Assembly (NCBI RefSeq): GCF_031769215.1
Contig: NW_026782025.1
Span: 868,001 to 932,000, forward strand
DNA: 64,000 nt
Reading direction: 5' to 3'
Origin: Ylistrum balloti
Taxonomy: Eukaryota
Shown: in pieces, positions 3,347-64,000 of the stretch
How positions within the stretch are numbered: position 1 is the stretch's first letter
Layout of the letters: the number at the start of each line of letters is the position of its first letter
Program-made: the position numbers and the translations under genes
Notes under the pieces: generated by a model
Database searches by the model: none
Told to the model about the DNA's origin: nothing
What the model saw: only the letters and a program-made list of their open reading frames with translations

Positions 3347-8016
<4,670 letters not shown>

Positions 8017-15420: not shown

Positions 15421-18400
15421 ATGTACACTAAAGTCCTCCTCATTTTTATTCTTCTCTGCGTTGGATATGCGAACTCAAATTTTGCCACCCGTCGCAGAAG
15501 GCCACAAAGGCATCACAGGACACATATACCAAATACTCGACCAGCTCCACCACCTGTCACGCGCAAAGTCACGAACCTGTGTGAGAAAGTAGTCGGACAT
15601 GATTTCCTCGCCAACCCTGACGATTGTTCCAGGTACATATTGTGTATTGGTACAACGCTTCACGATCTTAGCTGTGGAAATCAGGTCTGGGACGACCAGG
15701 ACCGCAAATGTGTTGAGAAAGGCACGACCATAGGTCCCGACCCATGTCAAAAGCGTAAGTATTTAATATATTGCCAAATCCATAGGAATACTCCCATTCT
15801 GAAGGTCGACATTTCATTCTTTTGTTAAGTGAAAATATATCAAGTGCAATTATATTTTCAAACATTTAGAAAATATGTGCTTGAGGTAAAATTACAAGAA
15901 ATTTTGTCCTTGTCACCCCCATGTACCAGTTGAACTTCAAATCAGTAATACTATAGACTATTTTTCACCAGCCAATAAATTTTCAGACAATGTGGCCGAG
16001 TTTGGCAGCTTATCACTAAAGATTATAGTCTGAGCATTTACTATGACGGAGAGACCTACAGGGATTCTGGAGATGCATTTTGTTGTAGATACAGTCGCTA
16101 TCATTGTCTCCTTGTGAATTATTGTATTCCTTTTTCTGATGTGGCGTTCAATAGATTTGATCCTCAATAACGGTAAGGCTTCTGCCACGTGGTTACGTTA
16201 TTTCCACCCCGATTCTTGCTTTGAGAACCAGGCATTTAAAAGTTGACCCTAATAAAACCAAAGCGCAAGCGATGAAACAAAAGATGCCTACCTTTACAAA
16301 AATAACATGGTTTTATATTCTTGGTAATGAAGTTTGGTTACTTTTTCAATCTTTGTAGATATTCTGTCCTGGTATTATTGTTTTGAATTGTAGATCTTTC
16401 CTCGTTAATGGAAATATGGATGCAAACACTTTGAAATCTAAACCCAAATATTTTCTGGGTATATTCACTCATAAGAAGACGATGAAAGAAATGATGTGAT
16501 AAGACTTGCTAAGATCATCACTGTGGTTCAGATATCATTTTGAATGTGTTTTCATTATCCTTTGTCTATCTTTACAAAAATAATAAGCAAGATCATTTTT
16601 CGTGATATTCACGGGAGTATTTAAATGTTTGAAAGTGCTTCAAAGCAACCCCGCGTTTTAATATTCAGGACATTCCACAAGGCTATGTGAAGATTTCATG
16701 TAAGATTTTGTCTAAAAATATAAGATTATAAAAAACAAAGATAAGATGGATACAGAATCATGGAAGTTGCTTCATCAATTGTATCCACCATGTAAAACTA
16801 TGTCATTCCAACAAATATCACGTTTTCTTAACGAGAACCGTGTCAAAATCAACATATTTAGTTTCGAAAAAAAATTCCCGTGATTATAATATCACCGTGG
16901 TAATCCTAATTTTCTCATAGTCTTCATCAACTTACGTTCCCAATATCCTTTGTTTTTATCACTCATATATTATAACATCTATCATAGAAGTCCTGTCATT
17001 AGGTGAAAGCAGGTCCCTATAATAATCATAATTAAGATTGTATGCCTTTCATATCAAAATGGATTAGATCTCTCATCAAGCCGCTAATGTTGTTTATCAT
17101 TATGTGTTCAAAAACTCATCATAGTACTTTATTAATTAATTAAAGCCTTTTAACCACCATTTATCTAATTCTTTTCTGGTGTGGCTGACGTGGATAGCGC
17201 TATGATCTTCTCGTAACGTCTCCGACAAGGACTTAAATGTAAATGTATTGTAATGACGTGTATTTCCTTGTGTATCTAATTATCAACCATGGTCTGTAAA
17301 ACGCTAATTAGTCAGCATGTCAATCAAAACACTGGCTATATATACTGACTACCAACATATCCTAAACACTGGCTATATATACTGACTAACAACATATCCT
17401 AAACACTGGCTATATATACTGACTACCAACATATCCTAAACACTGGCTATATATACTGACTACCAACATATCCTAAACACTGGCTGTATATACTGACTAC
17501 CAACATATCCTAAACACTGGCTATATATACTGACTACCAACATATCCTAAACACTGGCTATATATACTGACTACCAACATATCCTAAACACTGGTTATAT
17601 ATACTGACTACCAACATATCCTAAACACTGGCTATATATACTGACTACCAACATATCCTAAAAAAACTGGCTATATATACTGACTACCCACATATCCTAA
17701 AACACTGGCTATATATACTGACTACATATCCTAAACACTGGCTATAGATACTGACTACCAACATATCCTACACACTGGCTATATGTACTGACTACATATC
17801 CTAAAAGACTGGTTATATATACTGACTACCAACATATCCTAAACACTGGCTATATATACTGACTACATATCCTAAAGCACTGGCTATATATACTGACTAC
17901 ATATCCTAAAGCACTGGCTATATATACTGACTACCAACATATCCTAAACCCTGGCTATAGATACTGACTCCCAATATATCCTAAAACACTGGTTATATAT
18001 ACTGACTACATATCATAAACACTGGCTATATATACTGACTACCAACATATCCTAAAACACTGGTTATATATACTGACTACCAACATATCCTAAACACTGG
18101 CTATATATACTGACTACATATCCTAAAGCACTGGCTATATATACTGACTAACAACATATCCTAAACACTGGCTATAGATACTGACTCCCAACATATCCTA
18201 AAACACTGGTTATATATACTGACTACCAACATATCCTAAACACTGGCTATATATACTGACTACATATCCTAAAGCACTGGCTATATATACTGACTACCAA
18301 CATATCCTAAACACTGGTTATATATACTGACTACCAACATATCCTAAACACTGGCCTGAACATATCCTAAAGCACTGGCTATATATACTGACTACCAACA

Positions 18401-21400
18401 TATCCTAAACACTGGCTATAGATACTGACTCCCAACATATCCTAAAACACTGGTTATATATACTGACTACATATCATAAACACTGGCTATATATACTGAC
18501 TACCAACATATCCTAAAACACTGGCTATATATACTGACTACCAACATATCCTAAAACACTGGTTATATATACTGACTACCAACATATCCTAAAACACTGG
18601 TTATGAATACTGACTACCAACATATCCTAAAACACTGGTTATAAATACTGACTACCAACATATCCTAAAACACTGGCTATATATACTGACTACATATCCT
18701 AAAGCACTGGTTATATATACTGACTACCAACATATCCTAAACACTGGTTATATATACTGACTACCAACATATCCTACACACTGGCTATATGTACTGACTA
18801 CATATCCTAAAAGACTGGTTATATATACTGACTACCAGCATATCCTAAACACTGGCTATATATACTGACTACATATCCTAAAGCACTGGCTATATATACT
18901 GACTACATATCCTAAAGCACTGGCTATATATACTGACTACCAACATATCCTAAACCCTGGCTATAGATACTGACTCCCAATATGTCCTAAAACACTGGTT
19001 ATATATACTGACTACATATCATAAACACTGGCTATATATACTGACTACCAACATATCCTAAAACACTGGTTATATATACTGACTACCAACATATCCTAAA
19101 CACTGGCTATATATACTGACTACATATCCTAAAGCACTGGCTATAGATACTGACTCCCAACATATCCTAAAACACTGGTTATATATACTGACTACCAACA
19201 TATCCTAAACACTGGCTATAGATACTGACTCCCAACATATCCTAAAGCACTGGCTATATATACTGACTACCAACATATCCTAAACACTGGCTATAGATAC
19301 TGACTCCCAACATATCCTAAAACAATGGTTATATATACTGACTACATATCATAAACACTGGCTATATATACTGACTACCAACATATCCTAAAACACTGGC
19401 TATATATACTGACTACCAACATATCCTAAAACACTGGTTATAAATACTGACTACCAACATATCCTAAAACACTGGTTATAAATACTGACTACCAACATAT
19501 CCTAAAACACTGGTTATAAATACTGTTATAAATACTGACTACCAACATATCCTAAAACACTGGTTATATATACTGACTACCAACATATCCTAAAACACTG
19601 GTTATAAATACTGACTACCAACATATCCTAAAACACTGGTTATAAATACTGACTACCAATATATCCTAAAACACTGGTTATAAATACTGACTACCAACAT
19701 ATCCTACTGACTACCAACATATCCTAAACACTGGTTATATATACTGACTACCAACATATCCTAAAACACTGGCTATATATACTGTCTACCAATATATCCT
19801 AAAACACTGGCTAAACATACTGATTACATATCCTAAACACTGGTTATATATACTGACTACATATCCTAAAACACTGGCTATATATACTGACTACCAACAT
19901 ATCCTAAAACACTGGTTATATATACTGACTACCAACATATCCTAAAATACTGGCTATATACACTGACTGCCAATATATCCTAAAACGCTGGTTACCTATT
20001 GTGTTTACAAACATATCCTAAAAATACTCATAAACACTGATTAATGTAGTTTTTATATGTGGCCAGTGCTTTAAGTTCTGTTAGTAGCACAAAGAAATCA
20101 TAAGACACTAGATTCATACAGTTAGTACAAAAAGGCCCTATACCACATACAACAGTATAAACAGGTCCTAAAAGACTTGGTACATATAGTGAGTTTAAAC
20201 AGTCCTAAAAGACTTGGTACATATAGTGAATATAAACAGTCAGGGTACATATAGTGAGTATAAACAGTCCTAAAAGACTGGGTACATATAGTGAATATAA
20301 ACAGTCAGGGTACATATAGTGAGTATAAACAGTCCTAAAAGACTGGGTACATATAGTGAGTATAAACAGTTCTAAAACACTATGTATATATAGTGTGAGT
20401 ATAAACAGTTCTAAAAGACTTGGTACATATAGTGAGTATAAACAGTCCTAAAAGACTGGGTACATATAGTGAATAACAACAGTCAGGGTACATATAGTGA
20501 GTATAAACAGTCCTAAAAGACTGGGTACATAAAGTGAATATAAACAGTCAGGGTACATATAGTGAGTATAAACAGTCCTAAAACAACAGTCAGGGTACAT
20601 ATAGTGAGTATAAACAGTCCTAAAAGACTGGGTACATATAGTGAGTATAAACAGTCCTAAAAGACTGGGTACATATAGTGAATAACAACAGTCAGGGTAC
20701 ATATAGTGAGTATAAACAGTCCTAAAAGACTGGGTACATATAGAATATAAACAGTGGGTACATATAGTAAAAGAGTACATATATAGTAACTAAAAGACTG
20801 GGTACATATAGTGAATATAAAACACATATGTATATATAGTACATATGTGAGTATAAACAGTTCTAAAAGACTTGGTACATATAGTGAGTATAAACAGTTC
20901 TAAAAGACTGGGTTCATATAGTGAGTATAAACAGTCCTAAAAGACTGGGTTCATATAGTGAGTATAAACAGCCCTAAAATACTGGGTTCATATAGTGAGT
21001 ATAAACAGTCCTAAAAGACTGGGTACATATAGTGAGCATAAACAGTCCTAAAAGACTGGGTTCATATAGTGAGTATAAACAGTCCTAAAAGACTGGGTTC
21101 ATATAGTGAGTATAAACATAAAAGACTGGGTTCATATAGTGAGTATAAACAGTCCTAAAAGACTGGGTTCATATAGTGAGTATAAACAGTCCTAAAAGAC
21201 TGGGTTCATATAGTGAGTATAAACAGTCCTAAAAGACTGGGTTCATATAGTGAGTATAAACAGTCCTAAAAGACTGGGTTCATATAGTGAGTATAAACAG
21301 CCCTAAAAGACTGGGTTCATATAGTGAGTATAAACAGTCCTAAAAGACTGGGTTCATATAGTGAGTATAAACAGTCCTAAATACGATGTTTATAAAATGA

Positions 21401-24400
21401 GTACAACATATTCTAAAACACGAGCTATAGGTAATGACTACAGTCGTAACTCTAAAACATATTCTGAAACAAAAGGATGACAAATGAAGCCGTCTTTTCA
21501 GCCGTTCATTTGATCAGTGACAAGGCGACCATTATTCATGTCCAGTTCCGGACAGTAATCATTGTTGCTCAAAATTACCAGAACGTATTTTAACTAAATA
21601 CGATACAATTAACAATATTTAAATAAACAAAATAATACAAACTATAGGGTAACATTTTAATGGTGATTAAATTGTCTATACATACTTATGAAGGTCTGAA
21701 AATATCTTTGATCCCGTATTACTATTGATGTAAGTGGTAGATTCTAATATTCTGTCTAATATACGTTTCCTATCTTTAATCTATGATATGTTCCCCTTGG
21801 TGTTGTTGTGGTTATGAATTACTTCAGATATAAACTGTCATACAATTTAATTGTTGCTTTGTGTTTAAGTTACTTGAGATATACATTGTAACGATGTTTA
21901 AGTCTTTAATTCGCCTGAAAGGTAATCTGTTTAAATCTCTATCCAATTTCTTGTGAAGCAACCTATTCTTATATCCACAGCTAAGAGATGGGGTCCACCT
22001 CAGGTATATGCGTCCCCTCCACGTAAGGTACCTGGAGGACGTAACGCTAAATGGAGGTTTGCCAAGCCCGTGTGTACTGCTGGATCGACCCGAAGGATCG
22101 CCCATCCGAGTAAATGTGCGCAATATTACGACTGTGGTTCGAACCCTCAGGAGGACTGGTGGGGAACCAACCTCAGGGAATGCCCCTATCCTCTTCTCTT
22201 TAATGTTCGTTTCGCCCAGTGTGATCATTACTCCAACGTTAGGTGTGGACGCAGGACTGTACCCCTCGATCCCTGTAAGTATGGTCTCTCACAGCAATCG
22301 TTATGTAAACTGTAAGCATGATTCCTCTCTACCAATAATAGAATAATTTTCCACACCCCTTATAACTATAATCTATCTCGACCACAGCAGGTACAGTAGC
22401 TTTCTATCCATGCAAGTGAAACCATCTCGACAACTGCAATTACAATTAGTTTGTATCCTTATTAAGTACTTTTTCCTCTCGATCCCTGTACGAATCGTCC
22501 TTCTATCAGGAAAATCCCTGTCGACATCTGTCAGTACCACTACAGAAATGAAGCAATAGGAAAAATGTTATTCAATTAGAAAATTATTTCTAAAAACACA
22601 TCATGATACATTTAGTAACAACTTCAGTTGATGCATACATGTGCCTGACCTTTCGAGACTTGCTCGAATACTTCATAATATTATTAATGTTTTGGCACAA
22701 ATAAGAACAATTGGATCTATCGTAATAGATATCAAAGGCATTCCATTGTACATGCAACACAGAAATATTCCTGTCGCTTCTAGTCTTGTAGCTTTGGAGA
22801 TAAAAAAAACAAAACAAAAAAAAAGACAGATGATTTTTAATGTCTGAAGAACATTCCCTTCTATAGTAACCTCTTGTTTACATATTTCAATTTCTTATGT
22901 ACGAAACCCCTTTCATTTGTTGGAGTTATATGTCAGATTATGGCTCATTGCTTGTGAATTTGACCACCTCCCCCTAAAATGGTATTTTCTAATGATTTTT
23001 TCTATATTGATATACAGGTGGAGTGTGTCTCATTGCTTACATAAAATGTTTAAAACGGTTCAACATTGCATGTAACTCAGTTTTGATTTTTCTCATAAAA
23101 GCGATGAAACACTATATATATATATATATATATCTGTGTGTGTGTTTGCTGATGTATGTAATATACAACCTGCCACACTAATTGGATATTCATAACGCGT
23201 TTTTTGGAGCCATTGTTTCCTCATTACTTATGATAATACATTTAATATATTCTATAACAACTATACAAGTCACCTAAGCCATGTAGAGAGGGACAAGTCA
23301 TTTCTAGTGGAGTTTCATTTAATTGGTTTTCAATTTGATTATGTTGTAGTCTCATTATTAATACGTAATTGTATAAATGTATGTTAAGCTTGAAATATCT
23401 TTATACGACTGTCAGGTTTGTGATTAATATGAGCAATGCTTATAAAACTTTCATGTCTGAAATTTCATTATCTGTTTGAACTTTTTAATACAATATTTCA
23501 ATTTTGACAAAATATACACTTGTCTGATTAAAGATAAACTTTAAATTAACACAAAAAGAACAATAAAACTAGTACATTGTTTATAACTGTATGAACATAA
23601 CACAAGAGTTAAACAGACTCGTCCACCTTTATAAAATGTATTACTTATGACAATGCAATCATACAAATACATACATATGGGTATGTAATATTTTGATTTA
23701 AAAATAACAACTGAGTTCTTTGTAATATGGCGGTAACATTTACACATATTTATATGCTAAAAAAATTAACAGATGATAATATGAATGTTTTCAATATATG
23801 TAACCAGACAATCAGAAAGATATTTTCCATGTGTCTATTTAATTACATGAGATGTATTTAAATAAAGAATATTTCATGTAACTTTATGATAATAATATGT
23901 CTTTAGCTGTCTAGTATATGTAAACGTGTTATATATTTGACCGTGTAACACATATAGTAGTATATATATATACTTTTAACATAACTCATAAGTAATATTG
24001 TAGTTGTAATGTTTCAAATGTGCAAATTGATAATATGTGAATATCAATTAGTTAATATAGGGAATAGAGATGATAAGTGACTGGAAAAAAACAAATAAAC
24101 AAACAAACAAGGATTTCAATTTAACCGGTCACAACTAATACTGGAATGAAAATTCTACAGGTTCACTTTAGTCTGATAACGGACTGTGACCTGGTATCAT
24201 CTTCAACGAACAGTCCAATTTCGGGCATTAATTGTTCATGAGCTGCAAGCGTAATTCTGAACTTGGAGACTGATACTTCAGAAGGAAAAACGTTACAAAA
24301 GATAGTCAATCGCATTGTTAACTACCATGTCGAATATCACAATGAGGTGAAAACACCTATTTGAAATTCCTTAACTTTATGCGAAAAGTAGAGGTAAACA

Positions 24401-26363
24401 TTTATCGCATCATATTGCCATTCCCACTAAGCTGGCATTCATGTGTAAAATTAACTTCCACACTCTCGTTTGGCAAGCGGATTCTTTCTTTTCATTTACC
24501 TGAAATTGACCGCTCCGAAAGGTCAAATGTCTGTAAATGTCATATAGAACAGCTTTGAAGTACTTAACTTTTATTTATCCCTCATAATGGTTTTATAACT
24601 TTTAATTCGCAGTAGTATTAACAATGCATTTACTCATAAAGGTCATTCTAGCTTCTAATGTATTCCAATATAATGACGTATCAATGCGAACTATGAATCT
24701 CCTGTGTTCAGGTAGAGATTAATTAATATCCCGCATGTGCCTGTCACGTGAGTCATCATATGTTAGCTCGCACACTTAATTGGCGTCAATTAAAAGTATT
24801 AGAATTAAGCGTCGTCCTGGGCTTAAACTGTTTCTGTCAAGTTCTGTATATCTCTTCACTGATGGCAGACAGTTTGATATATAGCTGACGGTGTGACACG
24901 ATGTTCGGAATATACTTGTACATTATAGAATAATATATCTACTTGAAAACAACATTACTTTCCACTTTATATGCAACTACAAACGTAAGTGTAGAACAAT
25001 GTTCAGTGGACCTAGCCTCGAAATATATCTATATGTGTATTCACTTATAAAAAATAGGGGGAAAAACAGTATTAAATACAAATAGTTGAGACAATGTCTA
25101 CAATATAAGTGTTTTCCTGTTCGCCGGGGCCCTATGTCAGTATGATTGATAGAATGAATCTTATAAACACGTCAACTACATTGCTTTGTTCCAAACAAGA
25201 GCCGTCAAATTACAATTGGAAATATCTAATTTGATGACAAAACAGTTCGATTTTCTAATAAAGATCAGCCACCAGAGAAGAGAAGCTGTCGTATGATTGA
25301 TGTGAATTCTTATGAATCCATGTTAATAAAATTATTTGATTATAAATCAATTACCCTCAAGCTATCAGTCTGCTAGAATGCAATTTAGATATGAAGAATG
25401 CGTTATATGTTAAATAAATCATATTTGCACATTTTCAGTAAGTCTGTTATGCAAACTGGAATTAATGGGAGTCAACTGCGTGACACGTTCAATTGATTAA
25501 GTTCTATGATATAATCTGTACGCTGTTAAAGTTAAGAGATTTTATCTTTTAACTATAGATGACCTTTCTGTCGCCAGATTCATTTCTTATATCTATCCCT
25601 CTGCTACATTCGAAAAGCCAAATGGAAACAAAACCCATTTATTGTGCACCAGTTCAAACCATTAAGCTATTGTTTAATGTCATTACTTTAAAAGCTGCTA
25701 ATATTTTTTCTCCATATTTTTATAAGTTTCCTCTTCAGAGACTGAAGAAACGCCCAGAAATTTACAACACTCTGGAATCTGGGGCGTTAAGTTTAAGGTC
25801 ATTTCCGGATAACAATCCGAAAAATAATTCACATTACTAACCTACAGAATCAATCCACATACTGTTTTAAAGTGAAATAGCCATATTTCACCTGCTCTCA
25901 CTTCATCTGTATAAGAAAATTCACTTCTTATAATAAACATATATCTTAATGTCTTTTTTCTCCTCGTATCTAACCTGTCCATTACCTATGGACCGCCTTT
26001 ACAGTTTTATGTTTGGGAATAATTATAGTATGTTATAACGTTTGTGGAGTTGAGTCTATCTTGTTTAATTTTGTTATTAGATGTGTATATTTTCTTCTCT
26101 CTTCGACAGGTGACTACATTGCCAATCAATGTAGAACGATCTCTTGTCCTCCGTGTATCATGCGTTACGGAACATGCAAAGGCCTTCCGAATGGACTTCA
26201 TCCATGGAAGAACAGGGAACAAACACCACACTTTTTGGTTTGCAAAGATCAACGCGTTGTGTTCCATGGAAAATGTATGTCCCCGACCCCAGGGTACAAA
26301 TTTGTGTTCGATCCAGTCATCCACACCTGTCTCCAGCCCAAGGATGGTTACAAATTCCCTTAA
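15421..26363 (+). CDS. Gene A: secreted triple chitin-binding type-2 (CBM14/peritrophin-A-like) protein, 293 aa, with Arg/His/Pro-rich extension
   Basis: Exons 15421-15754, 21981-22274 and 26110-26363 with phase-1 GT-AG introns, 882 nt in frame. Signal peptide MYTKVLLIFILLCVGYANS; domains C..PDDCSRYILC..C..WD..C, HPSKCAQYYDC..ECPYPLLFN..C..C and CKGLPNG..PHFLVC..C..FDPVIHTC. AATAAA at 26494. Confidence 0.9.
17327..19992 (+). repeat. 37-bp minisatellite array 1 (AAACACTGGCTATATATACTGACTACCAACATATCCT), ~72 copies, gene A intron 1
   Basis: Period 37 with 33- and 38-bp variants; no unique spacers. Confidence 0.97.
20155..21381 (+). repeat. 37-bp minisatellite array 2 (AAACAGTCCTAAAAGACTGGGTACATATAGTGAGTAT), ~34 copies, gene A intron 1
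   Basis: Period 37 (GACTGGG at 21124, 21161 and onward), with a ~28-bp deletion variant alternating in the 5' part. Confidence 0.97.
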
Positions 26364-28578: not shown

Positions 28579-31500
28579 TTACACAATAATAGGACTGAAA
28601 TATACACATTTCTTTAGAACAGGATCAAATAGTTGAGGTTTTGCTCCGGAACATCTTGTCTGCAGGACAACACGATCGTTTTTGCAGACAACGTAATATG
28701 GCGACCTTTCTCTTCCGGACCACACGTTTGGCCCATCCGGATATCCGTCACAACTGGGCATGCGCAGATGACAGGGGATACAGTGAGCTGTCTTACACTT
28801 GTTGGCATCATAGTCACCTGTAACATAACAAACCATGTTTACATACATACGCCTTATTACCCTTTAGAAACAAGTACTAGAATTTAAAGTTAAGACATAT
28901 GACAAAAGGAAAACTTTCAAAAGAATCAGATTTATTGTAAATTATAAATGAACGGCCAGATGCATTGCAACACCAAGCAAAAGAGATATAAATAGTATTT
29001 TAGACACGATAATTCACCCAAGCCGAATTTAACAGATTTGCAATTTTCCTTTGAATGTATCCAACGATCAAAAAGAAGAAAAAAATATGACAAAATTCAA
29101 AATTTCAAAATACAAATATTTAATACAACAGCTGTATAACATTCTAAATGAATAGTGGAGCCAAGCCAGCGCCATGTACTTATGTTTTTTTTCAAGTTTC
29201 CTAAAAACGTAATATTTGTTGTATACGTTATAGTATTGTTATAACCACTAATGCTGTGTTATCGGACTTATAAATCAACTGTTCCATAGTTTCAGTTTCA
29301 GATAGTAACAGAACGAACATCAAAATAGAGGTGATACACAAAACAATCAAGTTGAGTACACATGGTGTTTATTAGACCACCTCCTGTCCTATGGTGTTCA
29401 ATGGCGAGGTAAAAAAGTTTGTAAAAAAATCAATCTCAGCCTTATTGAGAAGTTGGAATGGGCGTGGTCAAATAAACATCGCATGTAATCAGCTAAATTG
29501 TTCTGTTTGTCAAATAAATTTCATGAATATCAATTGGGTGTTTTCATTCGGCATTTTGTGAGACTTCAGAAGTGACATGCTTAAACACGTTAAACCTAAA
29601 AACATTAAAAAAATAAATATAAAAATTAGATTATCACTCAGCTATTTCCAGAAATTTTCACTTAAGTTATGATGAATAATAAATAAATATGCGTCATGCA
29701 TTCATTTCGTCCTCCGTGACACTTTATTTATGAGAGGAGCGACCGAGCATGGTAATTCTGACTGTAAGTAAGGGACATCCCTAAAAGTGTGTGACAATAG
29801 TTAAAGAATTCTAAATACAATGGAAAACATGCCTACGTTTTAATAGAAAACTCTAGCACATGTAAACGACAACTGCTGTTCTAGGTTAGCACATGTAAAC
29901 GACAACTGCTGTTCTAGGTTAGCACATGTAAACGACAACTGCTGTTCTAGGTTAGCACATGTAAACGACAACTGCTGTTCTAGGTTAGCACATGTAAACG
30001 ACAACTGCTGTTCTAGGTTAGCACATAGGTTAGCACATGTAAACGACAACTGCTGTTCTAGATTAGCACATGTAAACGACAACTGCTATTCTAGGTTAAT
30101 ACACAAATACAATCGCAAACACCATCGGTATAGCGATTCGACCAAATTATGGGAAAACTTCGGTTGTCATTAAGCCATTTGCTTCGGTGGACATATGCTG
30201 TTGGAGGTTTCACGGCAAGATATGTAAAGAACCGTATATCAAAGAAAACATAGTATCTGTCGATTAAGATCATGAGCACGAGACATCTTGAACGGCTTAG
30301 GTAGAATGACAAGATTCCCAAAAATGTCTCTTTTCGCTAGGCCGACTGAGGCGGACAATGCCATTGGGAAAAAACACACACGAACGAGAAAACAACATAA
30401 ATCGATGTCATTATGTGATCTGGTTAAGTCGCACTTAAAACATGGAGGTGTTGTCGTTTTTTGTTTTTGTTTTGTTTTTGTTTTTGTTTTTTTTTTTTTT
30501 GTTTTTTGTTTGGGGGGGGGGGGGTGGGCGGGTGAGGGGGTGGGCGGGTGAGGGGGTGGTGGTAAATGAATGCATTGAGAATGAGTGTATTTGCTACACG
30601 ATGTGGAACACTTACACGGTTCCTTGGGCTCCATTCTGTCCCCACACGTGACCTTATCTGGTTGTCTACACCTTCCCATTCCTTCGTCATATAACTGGGG
30701 GTAGGAACACTCCTTCTCCACGATGATCCCGGTCCTACGGGAGGCTGGACAGTCTATGTACTTGGCGCAGGATGTCGCCACAGACAGGTAAGTTTGACCG
30801 CCTTGACAGGTGTCCAGTTCGTGTGTAGCATCTGCAGAAAATACACGGGAATACAACCATAAACTAGACGGCATATACTGAAAATCTCATCGAGAAACCA
30901 AGATATGTTACGTCTGCTAGTATATATTGTAGTTTCCGTTCTGTTGGGGACCCACTTAGACAATTATCTTATATGTATATCAATATAAATTTCCTGTTCA
31001 ATATGATGGTTTTGCTTTCATTGTGCTCTCTCTCAGTTTCATTCTCTCCACAATATAATATTGCTTTCCTTTTATAAAATCCACGATTTTACAGCTTTGT
31101 TTTATAAAACCAACGATTTTACAATTTTGTTTTATAAAACCCATGATTTTACAGCTTTGTTTTATAAAACCAACGATTTTACAATTTTGTTTTATAAAAC
31201 CAACGATTTTACAATTTTACAGATTTTACAATTTTGTTTTATTATTTTAAAATCCACGATTTTACAGCTTTGTTTTATAAAACCCATGATTTTACAATTT
31301 TGTTTTATAAAACCCATGATTTTACAATTTTGTTTTATAAAACCCATGATTTTACAATTTTGTTTTATAAAACCCATGATTTTACAATTTTGTTTTATAA
31401 AACCCACGATTTTACAGCTTTGTTTTATAAAACCCACGATTTTACAATTTTGTTTTATAAAACCCATGATTTTACAATTTTGTTTTATAAAACCCATGAT

Positions 31501-32699
31501 TTTACAATTTTGTTTTATAAAACCCATGATTTTACAATTTTGTTTTATAAAACCCATGATTTTACAATTTTGTTTTATAAAATCCACGATTTTACAGCTT
31601 TGTTTTATAAAATCCACGATTTTACAATTTTGTTTTATAAAACCCACGATTTTACAGTTTTGTTTTATAAAACCCATGATTTTACAGTTTTGTTTTATAA
31701 AATCCACGATTTTACAGCTTTGTTTTATAAAACCCATGATTTTACAATTTTGTCTTATAAAACCCATGATTTTACAATTTTGTTTTATAAAACCCATGAT
31801 TTTACAATTTTGTTTTATAAAACCCATGATTTTACAATTTTGTTTTATAAAATCCACGATTTTACAGCTTTGTCTTATAAAACCCATGATTTTACAATTT
31901 TGTTTTATAAAACCCACGATTTTAGTTTTGATAAGTTTAACGTTACTTCATCAGTAACAGGCGTTTCTTATATTCTACATTAAAATGGTCCCTGTTTACC
32001 TATTATTTGTCTTTTATTAATCTGTCTTGTGCCTTTTTACCGATGGTCAGTCTGGTTTATTTTGTATTGTTACGGTGTTGGTATAAATAAAATGAAAATT
32101 AATATCTAAAAACTTTAAAAATTTGTAAGATTAATGAAGAAATAAAGATGATCGTAAATAATTAAAAAAAAATCCAATTACTTGTTCGATAAATGAACTA
32201 CTGTATACTATATAAAGATCGCCCAGGGTTTAAATATTTATTTTCGTCCGATGTTAATATTCGCGTTGGAAGAATTAAAGCAGCTCTATCTTCAAACATT
32301 TGATGACAAAATGACAAAGTTTGTGGAAGTTAAAATACGACGAAATACTACCGATATTATTAAATAACGAACCCAATCTTCTACTTTATACTTCCTGCTT
32401 ATCATGTCGGAAACATGCCTATAACCAGTAATAATTAATGAAGTAGATGTTGATATAATTACAAACTCACTTGTACACCTGTCTTGGATGGATCCCTCCT
32501 TAACACATCGTTTACTGCTGACGTCTACAACGTTACCCTTAGGACAGCGGAACTGTGACATCACGGTCCCCACACACATGTAGAACACAGAACAGTCTTT
32601 AGGATCCCCTATCCATCGAACACCAACATTCCCGTCACAAATCTCGCGAGATTCTGACAGAACAAACGCTCCGACCACCAAAACAATCAACTTCTCCAT
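28579..32699 (-). CDS. Gene B: secreted triple CBM14-like chitin-binding protein, 227 aa
   Basis: Minus-strand exons 32699-32471, 30831-30616 and 28817-28579 with phase-1 GT-AG introns, 684 nt in frame. Signal MEKLIVLVVGAFVLSES; DPKDCSVFYMC; SCAKYIDC..ECSYPQLYDE; DYDANKC..CIPC..RMPSCDGYPDG..SPYYVVC..LFDPVLKKC. Confidence 0.92.
29852..30097 (+). repeat. 33-bp minisatellite (GGTTAGCACATGTAAACGACAACTGCTGTTCTA), ~7 copies, gene B intron 2
   Basis: Near-identical 33-bp units, one of them truncated. Confidence 0.95.
30460..30562 (+). repeat. Low-complexity (TTTTTG)n / poly-T / poly-G tract
   Basis: Seen directly, about 50 nt inside gene B intron 2 from the donor. Confidence 0.9.
31070..31924 (+). 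repeat. 30-bp minisatellite (TTTATAAAACCCATGATTTTACAATTTTGT), ~28 copies, gene B intron 1
   Basis: Period 30. It produces the stop-free ORFs of 241-298 aa in the track. Confidence 0.97.
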
Positions 32700-42224: not shown

Positions 42225-42545
42225 TGGATCTAGAATAAGTGAGATGTGATTAAACAGGGGAAATAAGGGGGCGTTTGATCTAGAAGTAGTGAGATAAGTT
42301 GTTATACGGGGGAGAAGAGGGGGCATTTGATCTAGAAATAGTGAGATAAGATGTTAAGCATTAGAGATAAGGGGATATTTGATCTAGAAATGATGAGATG
42401 TGTGGATAAAAAGGGGCGATAAGGGAGCATTTGACCTAGATATAGTGATATATGTGGTTATACGGGGGAGATGAGGGTGTTTGTGATCTAGAAATAGCGG
42501 GATATGTCGTTATACAAGGGAGATAAGGGGTATGATCTTGAGACT
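42225..42545 (+). repeat. Old degenerate ~52-bp tandem repeat, ~6 copies
   Basis: Recurrent TTTGATCTAGAA..AGTGAGAT..GGGGAGATAAGGGG at roughly 52-bp spacing. Confidence 0.7.
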
Positions 42546-42630
42546 AGATAATAGATAATCATTATTGTTATTCGGTCTCTGACAATAGAACCTTTCTCAA
42601 AGATCCTTCACCCCTTGCTTCTGCCACCTG

Positions 42631-50589: not shown

Positions 50590-52906
50590 TTATTTATATA
50601 ACATAGTTACATCCTTTACGTCAACGCATTGTTTCTTGACGGGATCGAACACATAACTCCCAGCACTGCTGGCGTCCAATGTACACTTAGACTGGAAAGT
50701 TAGGCGTTCCTTGTAACATGTGATGAAATATGGTGTCCATTCCCGTCCTTTCCAGGGATTGGGGCCGTCATCTGCACCTTCACAGCTGGGAAATCTAACC
50801 TCACACGGCACACAGTGAGAGGACAAACCACATTGGTAGGCGTCGTAGTCACCTGAAGAGAGTAATATGTGATTTTTTTTATTGGGAGAAAGAGAATATC
50901 AAATTCTGTATAAAAGTCAAGGCCGTTACCTTTACGTCTACGATTTCCACCCGATCTCAATTACTAAATATCACCTGGTGAAAATCTTATATTTTTGTCA
51001 TAGATTCGTCTCTTTAAAAAACCGTTTGATTTCCCCAATGCAATTTTTAAGCCAATAGTTTGGCCTTCTTTACACTCATTGTTTCCTTGCAAACGTAACG
51101 GAACATTTTTCAAATATTTGAAACAGAATTTTGATTTTGCAATACAACTAAACAGGTTATTATTCAAAACGAAAAATTAAAGTATTTCTAAACATCTATG
51201 AAAATGATTTTAAAAGTCAATTTCTTCTATGTCGCTAAGTATGACAATTCAAAAATGAAGTTAATGAAACGATAAAAAAAACGGGAAATGATACCATGCG
51301 ACAACTACAATACACTTATATATCCTTAAAGAAGGGAATGTTTTCTGGAACGAATAACTTGATAGCCAATAGACGGAAATTCTAGAAATGTTTAGAAAAC
51401 GAAACAATAAGACGGGTTGATTTTAAAAACAAGTGAATTAATTAACAAGGCGTTTCATGTATGTATTTAAGACATATCAATTTAAGAAATTGCAAAAATT
51501 ACTCCGTATGTTTATTTTCCTTAAAACGTGTTTCAATTTGTGTAAGGTTAAATATAACTTGTATCGAATACACGCACACGTTTTCACAAGCGATGTAAAA
51601 TAGCGTTTTAAAAAGGTGTCAATCTTCTCTCATTTACTTATCTATCGACATAACGGATCACCTCTCACGAGTCTGTCCTACAGGTATCACATAAAAATAG
51701 TACCTGCTGTCCCAATAGTAATTGTAAGAGATTACTACATTTGGAGTATCTAAATTTCTATTTTCTTAAAGTTTTTCCTCTTTCTTATGCCTCAATTGAC
51801 AATATTCACATTTTGCTACTAAGCTGGGGGTCCTGTGAGGAATACTTTGGGTTCTGTACTCTGGCCGAGACATACCCAGTATTGAGGTAGAGTTATGACT
51901 GATTTAACCGTTGTCGGTATAGTGTGACCGTTTAGGGTGTCCTGCTGGGAACATTTAGTGTGGTAGCAATATTAAGTCGGCTTCTGTTCCGCACTGTCAC
52001 AGGGAAACATTCACGTACATGCCGCAGCCTCCCAAAATCACACGCATGCAATACATTCACTCAACTCCCAGAGAGACCGTCTTTAAACGGCACTGACTGC
52101 TTAAAAGACATCAAAGAATATAAACAAAACAGTCTTTCATCGGACAAGGTAAGAAAGCACTGAATAATCTCCTACAAATGGAGACCTCATTTAAAGTCTT
52201 GTTTCACTTACAGCCAACCCCTTAATTGCATAGCCAGCCCTCATACAAATACCACAGCATTGTCAAGACTTACATGGTGATTTGGGTTCCTTCCTGTTCT
52301 CACACTGGACTTTATCATGGTGCTGGCATTGTTCTGTAGTGACGTCATAGAGCTGAGGATAAGGACATTCATTGACATTTGGGACACCGGAGTGACAGTC
52401 CACGTACTTGGCACAGTTAGAGTGGGGCAGTCTGTCCTTGGGAGTTGACTGGCACACAGTCTGAGTGTGTATTACGGCCAATCCTCCCAGTGGTGGCTTT
52501 CCCTGGTCGACAGTTGGTTTAACTTGGGTCGTGTCGGGTTTCCCTTGGACAGAGTCCGTTTTACCCTGGTCTACAGTTGGCTTTACTTCATCAACATTTA
52601 CTTTTCCTTGATCGACTTCCGGTTTTCCTTTCTTACCTTTATAAGAGAATCAATAGACACATGTTGTGAGTCGTAACTAAAGCAACAAATGTAAAATAAT
52701 ACATGGCCTTCCGCGGATGTAAAGTTTGTCTCTCGGCAAGCGAAATCAAATGTTCGATATGATGATAAAAATAGGAAAACAATGGAATAAAAAAAAGTAA
52801 AAAAAAGATACTTCATATTCAAATAACTGAATTTGATCACCTTTTAGATTGATGATAATTGGTTTGTATTATAGTGTCCCTTAGTTAAAGATGTAACAAA
52901 CCACAA

Positions 52907-52951
<45 letters not shown>

Positions 52952-53415
52952 TATAATAAAGGTTATTGAACAGGTACTTGACACCGGATTACGTTGTCTT
53001 ATAATTAATTGCTTGTGTTATAATGAATATCAAGGCAAAATTATCATATTAATTTTTCATGTTTGTTTATCATTGACTAGTTGCGAATGGTTATACAGGC
53101 AGGGGAATGAATTTCACAAAATTAGACTATGAAATATTACAAAGGGGCGCTAGAGAGTTATATTAAGTGACTGTTAATATCTTTATCATACTTACATGTG
53201 TCAAGTCGGGACCCTTTCGGAACGCACGCGCGGCTCACAACATCTGTCACCGTGTTTGTTGGACAAGTATATTTAAATTCCATTCCATGAAAACAAACGT
53301 AAAAGCTGGAACAATCATTTGGATCTGTTAACCATCTTGACCCCTTCACATCTCTACAGTGATCTTCTGCAAACGCAACGGAGACGCAGATCGCGAACAA
53401 ACTTATAAACAACAT
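50590..53415 (-). CDS. Gene F: secreted triple CBM14-like chitin-binding protein, 281 aa, with a DQGK-repeat linker
   Basis: Minus-strand exons 53415-53196, 52636-52274 and 50852-50590 with phase-1 GT-AG introns, 846 nt. Signal MLFISLFAICVSVAFA; DPNDCSSFYVC; NCAKYVDC..ECPYPQLYD; DYDAYQC..CVPC..RFPSCEGADDG..TPYFITC..VFDPVKKQC. Confidence 0.92.
51825..52130 (+). mobile_element. Degenerate tRNA-derived SINE in gene F intron 2
   Basis: GGCCGAGACATACC, a central AGTGTGGTAGCAATATTAAGTCGGC box and a 3' AAACAAAAC tail resemble recalled bivalve SINE superfamilies. Not verified. Confidence 0.4.
52912..52946. repeat. (TA)n microsatellite in gene F intron 1
   Basis: About 17 TA units seen directly. Confidence 0.95.
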
Positions 53416-59090: not shown

Positions 59091-60743
59091 CAGTCAATCA
59101 AATTCAAATTCATTTATTGACTTTGAGCTTTACAGCTCATCAGTATGTACACAATACATATAAATACAGTGGCAGGCAATGCAATACCGCAGTGGAGAAT
59201 GGACAGAAAATGCATGTAGTTACATATATTTTAACATTATATCATGCTATTCCTCAACTGGGTGGCATCATATATATATTTACTTAACATGGTTAATTCT
59301 TTAAAGTTCGTTGTACTCAATAATTGTATCAGCTTGAAAACTGATGGTTTTTTCCAGTAATACAATTTTATACGTCTCTCTCTTAAAGCTTGATAAAATG
59401 GACAAATAAACAAAAAATGATATTCGTCTTCAATATCTTCAGAATTACAAATTCTGCATATACGTTCATTTCTAACAATGTTTCGGTATCTCCCGGTTTC
59501 ACTATACAGCATATGCGCTGATAAACGTAATCTAGTTAGAGTAATTCTATTTCGCTTTGGTATATATTTACATAAATATTGTTGCAATGTTAAATTATCA
59601 ACTAAATGTCTATACAAAAAACATTTCGAGGAATTCTCTAATATTTCAAACAATTCTTGCCGTGCATTATCAAAGATTCTCTGTTTAACAATTGGCAGGG
59701 CAACAGACGGGTTCACATTGTGTTGATTCTAAGCCAAGACCGAGTAAAAAAAGTTTGTCTTTCACAAAAGTTACCCAATTAAAAACAGTATTTCGCTGTG
59801 GCATATACATGAGTTCATCATAAGCAGTTTTAAGAACACAGTTCTTAGTATTTAAAAGCTTGAACCAGTATTTAATTAAATTATAATGTCTGGTATGTAC
59901 AATTGGAAGTCTACCCAATTCAAAATAGATCATTACATTGCATGTTGACTTCTTAACACATAATATCCTTTTGCAAAATTCCAGGTGAACTTTCTCAATA
60001 TCTATGCCTTTGCACGAGCCCCATACCTCAGATGCGTAACACAGTATACTGTTAACATATGTATCAAAAAGTTTAATCAAGGTATGGCAGTTTAAATTCA
60101 AATTTTTACATTTTGTATATAAGGCAAATATTGACTTTCGACCTTGCCCGGATAATTGCTTTTGTACAACATTAAATTTATTGTTCCATTTAAAAACGAT
60201 ACCTAGATAAGTAAACTGTTCAACGACTTCTAATTTGTTTCCATCGAAGAACCATTCCTCGTTATTACGTAAGCGGCCTCCATTTCTAAAGACAAAAATC
60301 TTAGTTTTTGCCGTGTTAACGGTCAATTTCCATGAATTCGCATATATAGACAAACTAATTAACATATTCTGTAGCTCATTGGCTGATTCTGCAAGTAGCA
60401 CCAAATCATCCGCATACATTAATAAAAAGAGACTGAGTTCTCCAAACTCATACGGCCTAATACCGTTAGCAATAAAGTAATTTTCAAAATCATTTACATA
60501 CATTGAAAACATAATTGGGGATAAAATTTCCCCTTGGGCGAGACCCATATTGTTTACAAAAAAATCGGAACATCTTCCCTTAGATGAGACACATGTCTTA
60601 ACTTTTTTATACATAGCTTTCAAAATTAATAGCAGCCTTCCTCGAACTCCTAATTTTGACAATTTATACCACAATTTACAACGATCGACAGAGTCGAACG
60701 CTTTCGTGTAGTCAACAAAACAGCAGTCAATCGAACTTCAAAT
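59091..60743 (-). mobile_element. 5'-truncated RTE-X-like LINE (RT plus C-terminal Cys/His region), with one frameshift and target-site duplication
   Basis: CCFVDYTKAFDSVDR, GLAQGEILSPIMF, LMYADDLVL and YLGIVF (ORF 59685-60674). After a frameshift near 59730 comes LRLSAH..ETGRY..RICRIC..EDEYHFLFICP (59237-59716). The 3' end has AATAAA plus a (TTTGAA)-like tail, and an imperfect ~19-bp direct repeat flanks both ends. Confidence 0.88.
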
Positions 60744-61857: not shown

Positions 61858-64000
61858 ATGCTGACGCTGATCGTCGTCGCCGCTTTCTTCGCGGGGGTAC
61901 GGACAGAGTCACTGTGTCCCCAAACATCCTCCGTCGCCTGGGTGGAGGACAAAACCGATTGTTCTAGTTTCTATATGTGCTACCAAGGACGACATTTTAA
62001 GTACATATGTCCATCAGGTCTCGTTTGGGAACCGGACAGCCGGATGTGCGTCATCAAGGGATCAGCCGAGGATAAATGTACGCATGCTCATTTAGGCAAT
62101 GATAATATGTAAGATCCGGTCTTGGTAGAGCTTTCTAAACAACATTTTCAGATCTTCAGCATGCAATTTAACGAGGATGATCTGAGTTCGAACTGAAACC
62201 ATTATTTTTTTTTCTTAATTACCACTCCTTTGACATCTTCTAGATCACTTAGCCAGAGTTTTAATGATATTTACAAGTGTTCCGTAAACCATCTGTGTGT
62301 AAAGAGTATCCACGGTCCATTAAATTGCGATCTAAATATGACATGTACTTATTTTTCAGGCACGACTCCAGCTAAAGTCCAAAAGCCGTGTGTGTCCGGC
62401 GTCCGTGCACGTGAGTCACATCAGGAGAACTGTGCCAAATATTATGAATGTGGCGTGTCGCGTGTCGCAGGACCCAGTACTCCTACCCTGATGGAATGTC
62501 CATACCCTCTCCTCTTTGATGAACAGAAGGATCGCTGCGAGTTTCCAGAAACTGTGAAATGTGACAACCGGGTGGAACCTACAGATCCATGTAAGTATGG
62601 GCAACTTGTTTAAACCACCAACAATGTTATTTGCAACGATGATTTCTTGAACTTTATATAATTTAGTTCGGACAGTGCTAATTAAACGTAAACCAAGCTA
62701 AAAGTGTGTCCAAGTTTTCCACAGAAACATGAGGTGATCTGACAGACACAATTACTAACACACATATTTATCTTTTTTCAAACTTTTACTAGAATAATTA
62801 CAAAGCAAATATATGAGTGTTGAGACATTTTTATATCTGTAATTGACCGACAATGTCAGTTTCTACAATCGGAACTTTCTGCTCTTATGTTCCATGTTTA
62901 TATCTGTAATTGACCGACAATGTCAGTTTCTACAATCGGAACTTTCTACTCTTATGTTCCATGTTTATATCTGTAATTGACCGACAATGTCAGTTTCTAC
63001 AATCGGAACTTTCTACTCTTATGTTCCATGTTTATATCTGTAATTGACCGACAATGTCAGTTTCTACAATCGGAACTTTCTACTCTTATGTTCCATGTTT
63101 TTATCTGTAATTTGACCGACAATGTCAGTTTCTACAATCGGAACTTTCTACTCTTATGTTCCATGTTTATATCTGTAATTGACCGACAATGTCAGTTTCT
63201 ACAATCGGAACTTTCTACTCTTATGTTCCATGTTTATATCTGTAATTGACCGACAATGTCAGTTTCTACAATCGGAACTTTCTACTCTTATGTTCCATGT
63301 TTATATCTGTAATTGACCGACAATGTCAGTTTCTACAATCGGAACTTTCTACTCTTATGTTCCATGTTTTTATCTGTAATTGACCGGCAATGTCAGTTTC
63401 TACCATCGGAACACTTGCCTCTAAGGAAAATATGAAACAGACCAATTATAATTAGATTTAGGTACATATTATCATTATTATAAACTCCTAGTTTTTCTTA
63501 TCTGTTTTCTTTAACAAGACTTTAAATATTGACTGAGGTAAAAGGTCAACATTGGCTATGATCGGTTATATGTGGAAATTGCTTAGTCTCGATTCAATGA
63601 GGCCAGTCGTTGTTTAGACGTTGGCGGTACCAGAGAGGTTGTGTTATATACATGTTTATCATATATTGTATGAATTTCCAGTTGATATGTGATTCATGGA
63701 ACGAGACTGGAAACATGATTTCAACAAGCTGAGTAGATTGTGGCGAGTTTCATAAATAACGAAAGAAATATAAGTATCATCCTTGTTACGTCACGGTGCA
63801 ATTGAGGAGTATGTGACGTCACATTATCTAAAGCTGACGTCACAATAGGTTGTGGCACATCTGTGAAATTCGGGAAATATTGCATGTGTAAATTCTCTGA
63901 ATAACAAGACAATCATGTGACAAAAGTATATTTCAAAACTGTCTGTCTTATTTTAGGCGAATATGACGTCAACAAGTGTGAAAGTGCAGATTGTCCGCCA
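61858..64000 (+). CDS. Gene G: secreted CBM14-like chitin-binding paralogue (third exon runs off the window)
   Basis: Exons 61858-62077 (donor T|GTACGC), 62360-62590 and 63957->64000 (CEYDVNKCESADCPP..), phase-1. Signal MLTLIVVAAFFAGVRT; DKTDCSSFYMC; NCAKYYEC..ECPYPLLFDE. Confidence 0.9.
62831..63411 (+). repeat. 67-bp minisatellite, ~8.6 copies, gene G intron 2
   Basis: GACCGACAATG at 62845, 62912, 62979 and onward. Confidence 0.97.

What the first reader, a model, noticed from the sequence alone, without database searches (positions are those of the whole stretch)
15421..64000. Seven-gene cluster of secreted triple chitin-binding (CBM14-like) proteins next to NAMPT
Sequence: seven paralogues (A-G) share a signal peptide, three coding exons, phase-1 introns, conserved Cys spacing, TATA-like promoters in most, and intact frames in the six complete genes. 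Knowledge: CBM14/peritrophin-A domains bind chitin. The EPxxPC-(D/E)YxxNxC..CxPCxxRxPSCxG motif is one I recall from molluscan shell-matrix Pif/BMSP-type chitin-binding regions, but these genes lack VWA or acidic domains. Inference: a lineage-expanded, probably co-regulated toolkit for chitin scaffolding (shell/periostracum/gut matrix) or chitin-directed defence, likely annotated only as uncharacterised proteins. The cluster may continue past 64000.
Basis: partly seen in the sequence, partly recalled or inferred. Interest (0 to 1): 0.8.

Follow-up and report, generated by a model that had tools for sequence, protein, structure and literature searches.

The report
Scallop cluster of triple chitin-binding-domain genes
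Seven intact neighbouring scallop genes encode small secreted proteins made of two standard chitin-binding modules plus a modified third one; they belong to an uncharacterised family found in every mollusc class looked up, so this is a real but fairly ordinary gene cluster.

Summary
The window is Ylistrum balloti contig JAUZWB010001367.1. It carries seven three-exon genes (A-G, 15421 to past 64000) in strictly alternating orientation. All introns are GT-AG and phase 1, and most split a Cys codon. Each mature protein has exactly 20 Cys with near-invariant spacing. All seven genes are intact. G's exon 3 starts at 63957 and ends 213 nt beyond the window.

Exons 1 and 2 each encode a Pfam CBM_14 domain. 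Exon 3 encodes an 8-Cys domain that misses Pfam on its own but looks like a derived CBM14 (hhalign 88%; VIA-align Z 5.5 to the human chitotriosidase CBM14).

The cluster is neither lineage-specific nor open-ended. It lies between NAMPT and ITPR, and Pecten maximus has the same genes next to ITPR. Orthologue dN/dS is 0.08-0.14. The three-domain architecture occurs in bivalves, gastropods, Octopus and a chiton, always under names such as "uncharacterized" or "peritrophin-1-like".

The closest known analogues are arthropod Obstructor/CPAP3, Aplysia EHEP (a three-CBM14 protein that does not bind chitin) and the CB + CB-like pair of Pif/BMSP. There is no VWA domain and no acidic region.

Function is inferred, not shown: most likely multivalent organisers of chitinous matrices. 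The scan had separately noted the C/D inverted repeat in this same window.

The parts
3368..8016 (+). 3' coding exons of NAMPT (nicotinamide phosphoribosyltransferase-like); the gene starts upstream of the window
   Evidence: ORF pieces. Pfam NAPRTase hits for 4776-4970 (E 8e-11) and 6175-6450 (E 1e-20). The outer limits were read from ORFs only.
15421..26363 (+). Gene A, 293 aa. Exons 15421-15754, 21981-22274, 26110-26363. It has a basic Pro/Arg-rich N-terminal extension and linker; mature pI 9.4.
   Evidence: Length equals the 293-aa gene called on the record. The Pecten orthologue is 98% identical in exon 3. dN/dS 0.08.
28579..32699 (-). Gene B, 227 aa. Exons 32699-32471, 30831-30616, 28817-28579.
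   Evidence: Identical to P0001 = RefSeq LOC132546535. CBM_14 E 1e-13 with 3 stretches. dN/dS 0.14 against Pecten. A spliced orthologous transcript exists as L003/L004.
33830..35021 (+). Gene C, 222 aa. Exons 33830-34055, 34189-34404, 34795-35021.
   Evidence: CBM_14 E 7e-8 (exon 1) and 1e-7 (exon 2); exon 3 has no Pfam hit. dN/dS 0.10 against Pecten.
39265..40749 (-). Gene D, 222 aa. Exons 40749-40524, 40202-39987, 39491-39265. Inverted copy of C, 82% identical overall.
   Evidence: Exon 1 dS 1.23 against C, exons 2-3 dS 0.165.
46412..48546 (+). Gene E, 226 aa. Exons 46412-46637, 47911-48138, 48320-48546.
50590..53415 (-). Gene F, 281 aa. Exons 53415-53196, 52636-52274, 50852-50590. The D1-D2 linker is long and rich in (V/T)DQGK(P/T)-like repeats.
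   Evidence: Length equals the 281-aa gene called on the record.
61858..64000 (+). Gene G, 235 aa. Exons 61858-62077, 62360-62590, and 63957 to 213 nt past the window end. RefSeq name 'peritrophin-1-like'.
   Evidence: (P0158). dN/dS 0.08 against Pecten.
59237..60674 (-). Reverse-transcriptase remnant of a retroelement in the F-G spacer. It is not part of the gene family.
   Evidence: Pfam RVT_1 E 3e-16 for 59685-60674.

Best explanation
This is an old, conserved seven-gene array, bounded by NAMPT and ITPR. It encodes small secreted, disulfide-rich proteins with a fixed plan: signal peptide, canonical six-Cys CBM14 (D1, exon 1), flexible linker, canonical CBM14 (D2, exon 2), then directly an eight-Cys CBM14-derived domain (D3, exon 3).

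D3 has lost the canonical second Cys, and probably its partner. It has gained an N-terminal C-6-C-4-C-2-C-6-C extension. D2 and D3 appear to form one rigid unit that also occurs on its own and in long (D2-D3)n arrays in other molluscs.

Shown here: the gene structures, intact frames, domain identities, conservation of the cluster in Pecten, strong purifying selection, the pan-molluscan spread of the architecture, and a spliced transcript of a B orthologue.

Inferred: the proteins are secreted by epithelia and bind chitin fibrils through several domains at once. They would then cross-link or organise nascent chitinous matrices such as the shell organic framework, larval shell or gastric shield. 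The seven divergent paralogues (pI 5.1-9.4, different linkers) would serve different tissues or stages, much as Obstructor/CPAP3 proteins do in arthropod cuticle.
For: - Gene models and intact frames. B is identical to the RefSeq product.
- CBM_14 above the gathering score for D1 and D2, with canonical six-Cys spacing.
- D3 is a CBM14 derivative. hhalign D3 against D1 gives 88% probability, E 3e-6, with Ser aligned to the canonical second Cys. Model residues 144-227 align to all 57 residues of the human chitotriosidase CBM14 at Z 5.5, and residues 187-220 to Der f 23 at rmsd 1.1.
- The AlphaFold model has mean pLDDT 85. Residues 121-220, including the D2-D3 junction, score 91-95; the D1-D2 linker scores 69-72.
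- The D2-D3 unit recurs: architecture '123' in 52, '23' in 27 and (23)n in several of 168 relatives.
- Family size: 811 representative clusters at E<=1e-3.
- All 27 D3-bearing clusters whose names were looked up are molluscan, including Octopus, Lottia, Haliotis and a chiton.
- Synteny with Pecten and ITPR.
- dN/dS 0.08-0.14 at dS about 1.
- Intronless 0.9-1.0 kb contigs from two runs carry the B orthologue, spliced exactly at the predicted junctions.
- The Atlas features search places the protein next to mollusc CBM14 clusters and 'protein obstructor-E'.
- CPAP3/Obstructor roles in chitin matrix organisation are described in PMC3504105.
Against: - No chitin-binding assay exists, and no expression data for this species (one search found no RNA run).
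- The best solved relative, Aplysia EHEP (profile E 4e-17), has three CBM14 domains. It is reported not to bind chitin and instead precipitates algal phlorotannins in digestive fluid (PMC10619976).
- The family is present in the shell-less Octopus and in Elysia, which argues against a purely shell-building role.
- The proteins are not markedly acidic.
- None of the accessions was found in any searchable paper.
- The rigid D2-D3 unit rests on one predicted model, whose coordinates could not be inspected.
Confidence: 0.55

Rival explanations
1. These are soluble ligand-binding proteins of digestive fluid or mucus, like Aplysia EHEP. The three domains would form a pocket that sequesters dietary or environmental small molecules (algal polyphenols, toxins) rather than chitin. 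The seven paralogues would give different ligand specificities.
For: EHEP is the top solved match by sequence profile (E 4e-17, co-linear over signal peptide, D1, linker and D2) and by Foldseek (E 3e-8). It is the same size (229 aa) and comes from a mollusc. EHEP and Der p 23 have the CBM14 fold but are reported not to bind chitin (PMC10619976). Scallops filter-feed on microalgae.
Against: EHEP's third domain aligns to the D1 part of the profile, not to D3, and has the canonical six Cys (PMC10619976), so it lacks the family's hallmark. D1 and D2 keep the aromatic residues between the second and third Cys that are typical of CBM14. That residue comparison is by my own reading of the alignments and was not tested. 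The family occurs in carnivorous cephalopods as well.
Confidence: 0.2
2. These are immune or antimicrobial lectins. They would be secreted CBM14 proteins that recognise chitin or related glycans on fungi, parasites or microbes, as tachycitin and shrimp peritrophin-like proteins do. In this reading the gene array would serve to diversify recognition.
For: D1 has the tachycitin/Avr4-type fold (Z 5.4-6.7). The paralogues form a clustered array with divergent sequences and charges.
Against: Purifying selection is strong and one-to-one orthology holds between genera (dN/dS 0.08-0.14). That is the opposite of the rapid turnover usual for recognition families. Copy number and order are conserved in Pecten.
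Confidence: 0.12
3. These are dedicated shell-matrix proteins of the Pif/BMSP system: free-standing versions of the Pif CB + CB-like module that join the chitin framework to mineral-binding partners.
For: Pif/BMSP are described as having a CB domain followed at once by an 8-Cys 'CB-like' domain (PMC3374290, PMC11291548), which matches the D2-D3 layout. The Lottia shell proteome lists secreted proteins with '2-3 peritrophin A domains' as major components (PMC3374290).
Against: There is no VWA, LG or acidic region. Signal peptide plus three domains account for the whole protein. No VWA-bearing protein was found among the 17 longer hits scanned. The family is present in Octopus and Elysia. No alignment to a Pif sequence could be made.
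Confidence: 0.13

Closest known systems
Arthropod Obstructor / CPAP3 ('gasp') family
   Same: Signal peptide followed by three tandem peritrophin-A/ChtBD2 domains with short linkers, no other domain, about 220-290 aa. It is a multigene family with tissue-specific members (PMC3504105, PMC5799365). The Atlas features search lists an 'obstructor-E' cluster at 0.90. Scallop larval transcripts have been auto-annotated 'obstructor-E' (PMC6476759).
   Different: CPAP3 has three six-Cys domains. Here the third domain has eight Cys with a different pattern and fails Pfam CBM_14 alone. Orthology to arthropod genes was not tested. All D3-bearing relatives looked up are molluscan.
Aplysia kurodai EHEP (PDB 8IN3, 25 kDa polyphenol-binding protein)
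   Same: A secreted mollusc protein of 229 aa with three CBM14 domains. It is the best solved match (profile E 4e-17 over signal peptide, D1 and D2; Foldseek E 3e-8).
   Different: Its third domain is a canonical six-Cys CBM14. It binds phlorotannin and is reported not to bind chitin (PMC10619976). Overall TM is only 0.23, so the predicted domain arrangement differs or is not comparable.
CB + 'CB-like' pair of Pif / BMSP shell-matrix proteins
   Same: A canonical CBM14 immediately followed by a weakly matching 8-Cys second domain, as described in PMC3374290 and PMC11291548. This is the same layout as D2-D3.
   Different: Pif/BMSP also carry VWA domains, an LG domain and long acidic/basic mineral-binding regions. 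None of these is present here. The sequence relationship was not tested because no Pif sequence was available through the tools.
Insect peritrophic-matrix mucins and peritrophins
   Same: Repeated CBM14 domains. They appear as multi-D1 or multi-D2 hits (P0012 'mucin-2-like', P0021).
   Different: They have many identical-type repeats with mucin linkers and no D3-type domain.

Membership tests
Pfam CBM_14 (peritrophin-A / ChtBD2) | HMM match above the gathering score (22.1 bits) | tested here: met
   Exon 1 and exon 2 peptides of A, B and C score 23-33 bits each. Whole B scores 51.6 bits with 3 stretches.
Pfam CBM_14 (peritrophin-A / ChtBD2) | Six Cys spaced CX11-24CX5CX9-14CX12-16CX6-9C | tested here: met
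   D1 is C-14-C-5-C-9-C-12-C-9-C and D2 is C-(7-13)-C-5-C-(9-16)-C-12-C-7-C in all seven genes.
Pfam CBM_14, applied to the third domain (D3) | HMM match, six-Cys pattern and CBM14 fold | tested here: inconclusive
   No Pfam hit when scanned alone. It has eight Cys, with Ser at the canonical second-Cys position. hhalign to D1 gives 88% probability, E 3e-6, and to D2 57%. The model aligns to the chitotriosidase CBM14 at Z 5.5 over 57 of 57 residues. The D3 profile finds nothing in the PDB by sequence.
Obstructor / CPAP3 | Signal peptide plus exactly three ChtBD2 domains and no other domain | tested here: inconclusive
   The architecture matches, but the third domain is not a standard six-Cys ChtBD2. 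The signal peptide was judged by eye only.
Obstructor / CPAP3 | Orthology to arthropod obst/CPAP3 genes and expression in cuticle-forming tissue | not tested
   No obstructor sequence was compared directly. All three-domain relatives looked up are molluscan.
Pif / BMSP | One or more VWA domains N-terminal to the chitin-binding domains | tested here: not met
   CBM_14 is the only Pfam family found in B and its orthologues. The 222-293 aa are fully taken up by signal peptide, three domains and linkers.
Pif / BMSP | LG domain and acidic/basic mineral-binding region after the CB domains | tested here: not met
   The proteins end 2-16 residues after the last Cys of D3. pI is 5.1-9.4.
Pif / BMSP | CB domain directly followed by an 8-Cys CB-like domain | tested here: inconclusive
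   The layout matches the published description (PMC3374290, PMC11291548), but no Pif sequence was available for alignment.
EHEP-type polyphenol-binding proteins | Three canonical six-Cys peritrophin-A domains that bind phlorotannin/tannic acid | tested here: inconclusive
   Profile E 4e-17 over signal peptide, D1 and D2. EHEP's third domain aligns to D1, not D3. Ligand binding is not testable here.
Functional chitin-binding proteins | Demonstrated binding to chitin | not testable with these tools
   This needs a pull-down. EHEP and Der p 23 show that the fold alone does not prove it (PMC10619976).

The most novel reading that the evidence does not exclude
The D2-D3 unit (canonical CBM14 fused to an eight-Cys derivative across a split Cys codon) is a distinct, possibly mollusc-specific (no taxon outside Mollusca was looked up) rigid two-domain module that Pfam does not model. 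It would be the common building block of this three-domain family, of giant (D2-D3)n proteins (9 and 21 units at an exact 147-aa period in Sinanodonta) and of the CB + CB-like region of Pif/BMSP. The NAMPT-ITPR array would then be the mollusc counterpart of the arthropod Obstructor/CPAP3 toolkit, acquired independently, with EHEP as a derived offshoot that changed ligand.
Probability: 0.3. Interest if true: 0.5.

Novelty: new member of a known kind. Interest (0 to 1): 0.3.

Why it matters
Chitin is a framework polymer in mollusc shells, larval shells, radulae, beaks and gastric shields. Outside the Pif/BMSP proteins, the proteins that organise it are poorly defined.

This work defines an uncharacterised family seen in all four mollusc classes looked up. 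The family has a fixed one-domain-per-exon structure, a diagnostic third domain, strong purifying selection, and a syntenic seven-gene array that can be followed across scallops. That gives concrete candidates for chitin pull-down, expression and knock-down experiments.

It also links the structurally solved Aplysia EHEP, published as having no homologues, to a large family. That link warns against reading "CBM14" as "binds chitin".

The genes are already predicted in RefSeq and the domain type is well known, so this is incremental rather than surprising.

Tried and rejected
- A mixed alignment of full-length proteins with single-exon fragments (A2) was misaligned because the domains resemble each other. 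It was not used.
- The first structure prediction, from four orthologues, was poor (pLDDT 43). It was replaced by a 41-sequence alignment (pLDDT 85).
- The word-based protein search found only B orthologues. A third search, seeded from a 707-aa Pinctada relative to reach Pif-sized proteins, found only oyster 'extensin-like' relatives and no Pif.
- The supplements of the Pif/BMSP paper hold no sequences. BLAST of that paper's LG-domain peptides against the hits found nothing.
- A strict regular expression for D3 missed true cases. HMMs built from the window's own domains replaced it.
- No RNA run holds this locus; only one DNA run does. Read laying was therefore not used, since it could not show expression.
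- Searches of the literature for orthologue accessions, the Lottia locus tag and the SRA run numbers found nothing.
- Tandem duplication of a two-gene (tail-to-tail) unit was considered as the source of the alternating orientation. Neither the identity matrix nor the tree groups odd-numbered against even-numbered genes, so this is unsupported.
- The deep branching of the tree is unresolved, so the age of the duplications relative to bivalve orders cannot be stated.
Full report
**What is there**

tblastn of exon peptides against the window finds exactly 20 matching exon-sized segments, and they group into seven genes. Splice sites were fixed from the sequence. Every gene has three coding exons, every intron is GT...AG, and every intron is phase 1. 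At the exon 2/3 junction of all seven genes, and at the exon 1/2 junction of C-G, a Cys codon is split T|GT or T|GC.

The coding sequences are intact, giving A 293, B 227, C 222, D 222, E 226 and F 281 aa. G has exons 1 and 2 in the window. Its exon 3 starts at 63957 after a good acceptor and runs 213 nt past the window end. The complete product is the 235-aa RefSeq protein P0158.

The B model is letter-for-letter the RefSeq protein 'uncharacterized protein LOC132546535 [Ylistrum balloti]'. The lengths of A, C, D, F and G equal those of the genes called on contig JAUZWB010001367.1. Window coordinate plus 868000 gives the record coordinate.

Orientation alternates strictly: + - + - + - +. Paralogues are 30-48% identical, except C and D at 82%.

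**Domains**

Exon 1 carries a hydrophobic N-terminus of 15-19 residues (judged by eye as a signal peptide) and a canonical six-Cys CBM14. Exon 2 carries a linker and a second canonical CBM14. Both pass Pfam's gathering score.

Exon 3 has no Pfam hit on its own. Together with the split Cys it forms an eight-Cys domain, C-6-C-4-C-2-C-6-C-21-C-10-C-(14-18)-C, and this pattern is constant across the seven genes.

Profile-profile comparison of 51 D3 sequences gives these results:
- D3 against D1: 88% probability, E 3e-6. The conserved 'SPY(Y/F)VVC' of D3 aligns to 'DCSxFYxC' of D1, so Ser replaces the canonical second Cys.
- D3 against D2: 57% probability.
- D1 against D2: 95% probability.

An AlphaFold model of B from a 41-sequence alignment has mean pLDDT 85. 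Residues 121-220, including the D2-D3 junction, score 91-95. The D1-D2 linker scores only 69-72.

VIA-align matches D1 to Avr4, EHEP, Der p 23 and tachycitin at Z 5.2-6.7. It matches residues 144-227 (D3) to all 57 residues of the human chitotriosidase CBM14 at Z 5.5, and residues 187-220 to Der f 23 at rmsd 1.1. These Z values are modest. Taken together with hhalign, they make D3 most likely a CBM14 derivative with an added N-terminal Cys-rich extension.

**Relatives**

A profile of four B orthologues was run against 1.84 billion representative proteins. It gave 811 clusters at E<=1e-3, 228 at E<=1e-10 and 44 at E<=1e-30.

The 168 proteins in hand were then classified with HMMs built from the window's own D1, D2 and D3:
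- 52 have D1-D2-D3.
- 27 have D2-D3.
- 13 have D3 alone.
- Several have (D2-D3)n, including Sinanodonta proteins with 9 and 21 units at an exact 147-aa period.

Thirty clusters were looked up by name. All D3-bearing ones are molluscan:
- Bivalves: scallops, Pinctada, oysters, Sinanodonta, Potamilus, Tegillarca, Dreissena, Solemya.
- Gastropods: Haliotis, Lottia, Patella, Nucella, Aplysia, Elysia, Physella, Bradybaena.
- Cephalopods: Octopus.
- Polyplacophora: the chiton Liolophura.

Their names are 'uncharacterized', 'hypothetical', 'Chitin-binding type-2 domain-containing' or 'peritrophin-1-like'. The only non-mollusc hits looked up were insect mucin-like proteins made of plain CBM14 repeats. 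Longer D2-D3-bearing proteins carry SEA, Sushi and galectin-like domains, but none of the 17 scanned has VWA.

**Age and constraint**

In Pecten maximus chromosome LR736844.1, the B orthologue is flanked by a C-type 222-aa gene, a D-type gene and an A-type 276-aa gene. The G orthologue lies about 75 kb away on the same chromosome. As in Ylistrum, it is followed by ITPR.

The Mizuhopecten B and G orthologues are probably on the same scaffold: both are listed with a longest contig of 619,187 bp. So the array is bounded by NAMPT upstream and ITPR downstream, and it is at least as old as the split between these scallop genera.

Nei-Gojobori estimates between Ylistrum and Pecten orthologues give dN/dS of 0.08 (A), 0.14 (B), 0.10 (C) and 0.08 (G), at dS about 1.0-1.3. 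In a maximum-likelihood tree the seven genes do not form one clade. They sit in an unresolved group together with Pinctada, Haliotis, Patella, Octopus and chiton sequences.

**Expression**

No RNA run holds this locus. However, the B orthologue P0004 (73% identical) lies on 930- and 1032-nt contigs from two sequencing runs. Its 684-nt reading frame is uninterrupted, and the two Cys codons are rejoined exactly at the predicted junctions. That is what a spliced mRNA would give. Purifying selection gives indirect support for the other genes.

**What it probably does**

The fixed plan of three chitin-binding-type domains behind a signal peptide, with no other domain, matches arthropod Obstructor/CPAP3. 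Those proteins organise chitin in cuticle and trachea (PMC3504105, PMC5799365). Automated annotation of scallop larval transcripts has already used the name 'obstructor-E' (PMC6476759), and the Atlas features search places B near an obstructor-E cluster.

I therefore rate a role as multivalent organisers of chitinous extracellular matrices as most likely, at about 0.55. Presence in Octopus and Elysia argues for chitinous matrices in general rather than shell alone.

The main caution is Aplysia EHEP (PDB 8IN3). It is the best solved relative by sequence profile (E 4e-17, co-linear over signal peptide, D1 and D2) and by Foldseek. It has three CBM14 domains, is reported not to bind chitin, and instead precipitates algal phlorotannin (PMC10619976). 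Its third domain is canonical, not D3-like.

**Pif/BMSP**

The literature describes a second, eight-Cys 'CB-like' domain directly after the CB domain of Pif and BMSP (PMC3374290, PMC11291548). I could not obtain a Pif sequence through the tools, so the relationship is untested. These genes fail Pif/BMSP membership outright: they have no VWA, no LG domain and no acidic region.

**Promoters**

A TATAWA motif lies 40-99 nt upstream of the ATG in B, D, E, F and G, but not in A or C. With about five such motifs per kb per strand in this window, this is weak evidence. Co-regulation was not tested.

**Verdict**

This is a new, well-delimited member group of a known kind of protein, of moderate-to-low interest.

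Noticed in passing
window 33830-35021 and 39265-40749; L001 165-392 and 7589-8833: C and D differ sharply by region: dS 1.23 in exon 1 but 0.165 in exons 2-3, which indicates recent gene conversion over exons 2-3. Pecten maximus has a D-type exon 1 (82% identical to Ylistrum D, 70% to C) on the same strand as its C gene, whereas Ylistrum C and D are inverted. An inversion therefore separates the two genera.
   Followed up: partly
L005 20753-22356; L006 22446-23133: An inositol trisphosphate receptor gene (2752 and 2754 aa) follows gene G in both Ylistrum and Pecten. This fixes the downstream end of the array.
   Followed up: yes
P0005, P0154, P0155 (Sinanodonta woodiana): Giant proteins built of 9, 5 and 21 D2-D3 units at an exact 147-aa period. 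They may be real repeat proteins or fused gene models.
   Followed up: no
PDB 8IN3 against alignment A4: Aplysia EHEP was published as having no homologues in other organisms. It matches the family profile at E 4e-17 co-linearly over signal peptide, D1, linker and D2 (PMC10619976).
   Followed up: partly
window 26110-26363; L001 15879-16127: Gene A's third domain is 98% identical in protein between Ylistrum and Pecten, although exon 1 is only 68% identical. This is unusually strong constraint on D3 of this basic, Pro/Arg-rich paralogue.
   Followed up: no
window 17326-21381, 31070-31924, 42227-44353, 62826-63412, 4950-5920, 7255-7658: Large minisatellite arrays (units of 22-82 nt, up to 65 copies) fill A intron 1, B intron 1, the D-E spacer, G intron 2 and NAMPT introns. 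The 17.3-20.0 kb array coincides with a GC skew of -0.45.
   Followed up: no
window 59237-60674, - strand: A reverse-transcriptase ORF (RVT_1, E 3e-16) from a retroelement remnant lies in the F-G spacer.
   Followed up: no
P0023 cluster (Dreissena polymorpha LOC127844910): One Dreissena locus has six annotated isoforms of 211-250 aa, and alternative gene models of 83-112 aa each carrying a single domain. This hints at alternative exon use or tandem exon copies in that species.
   Followed up: no
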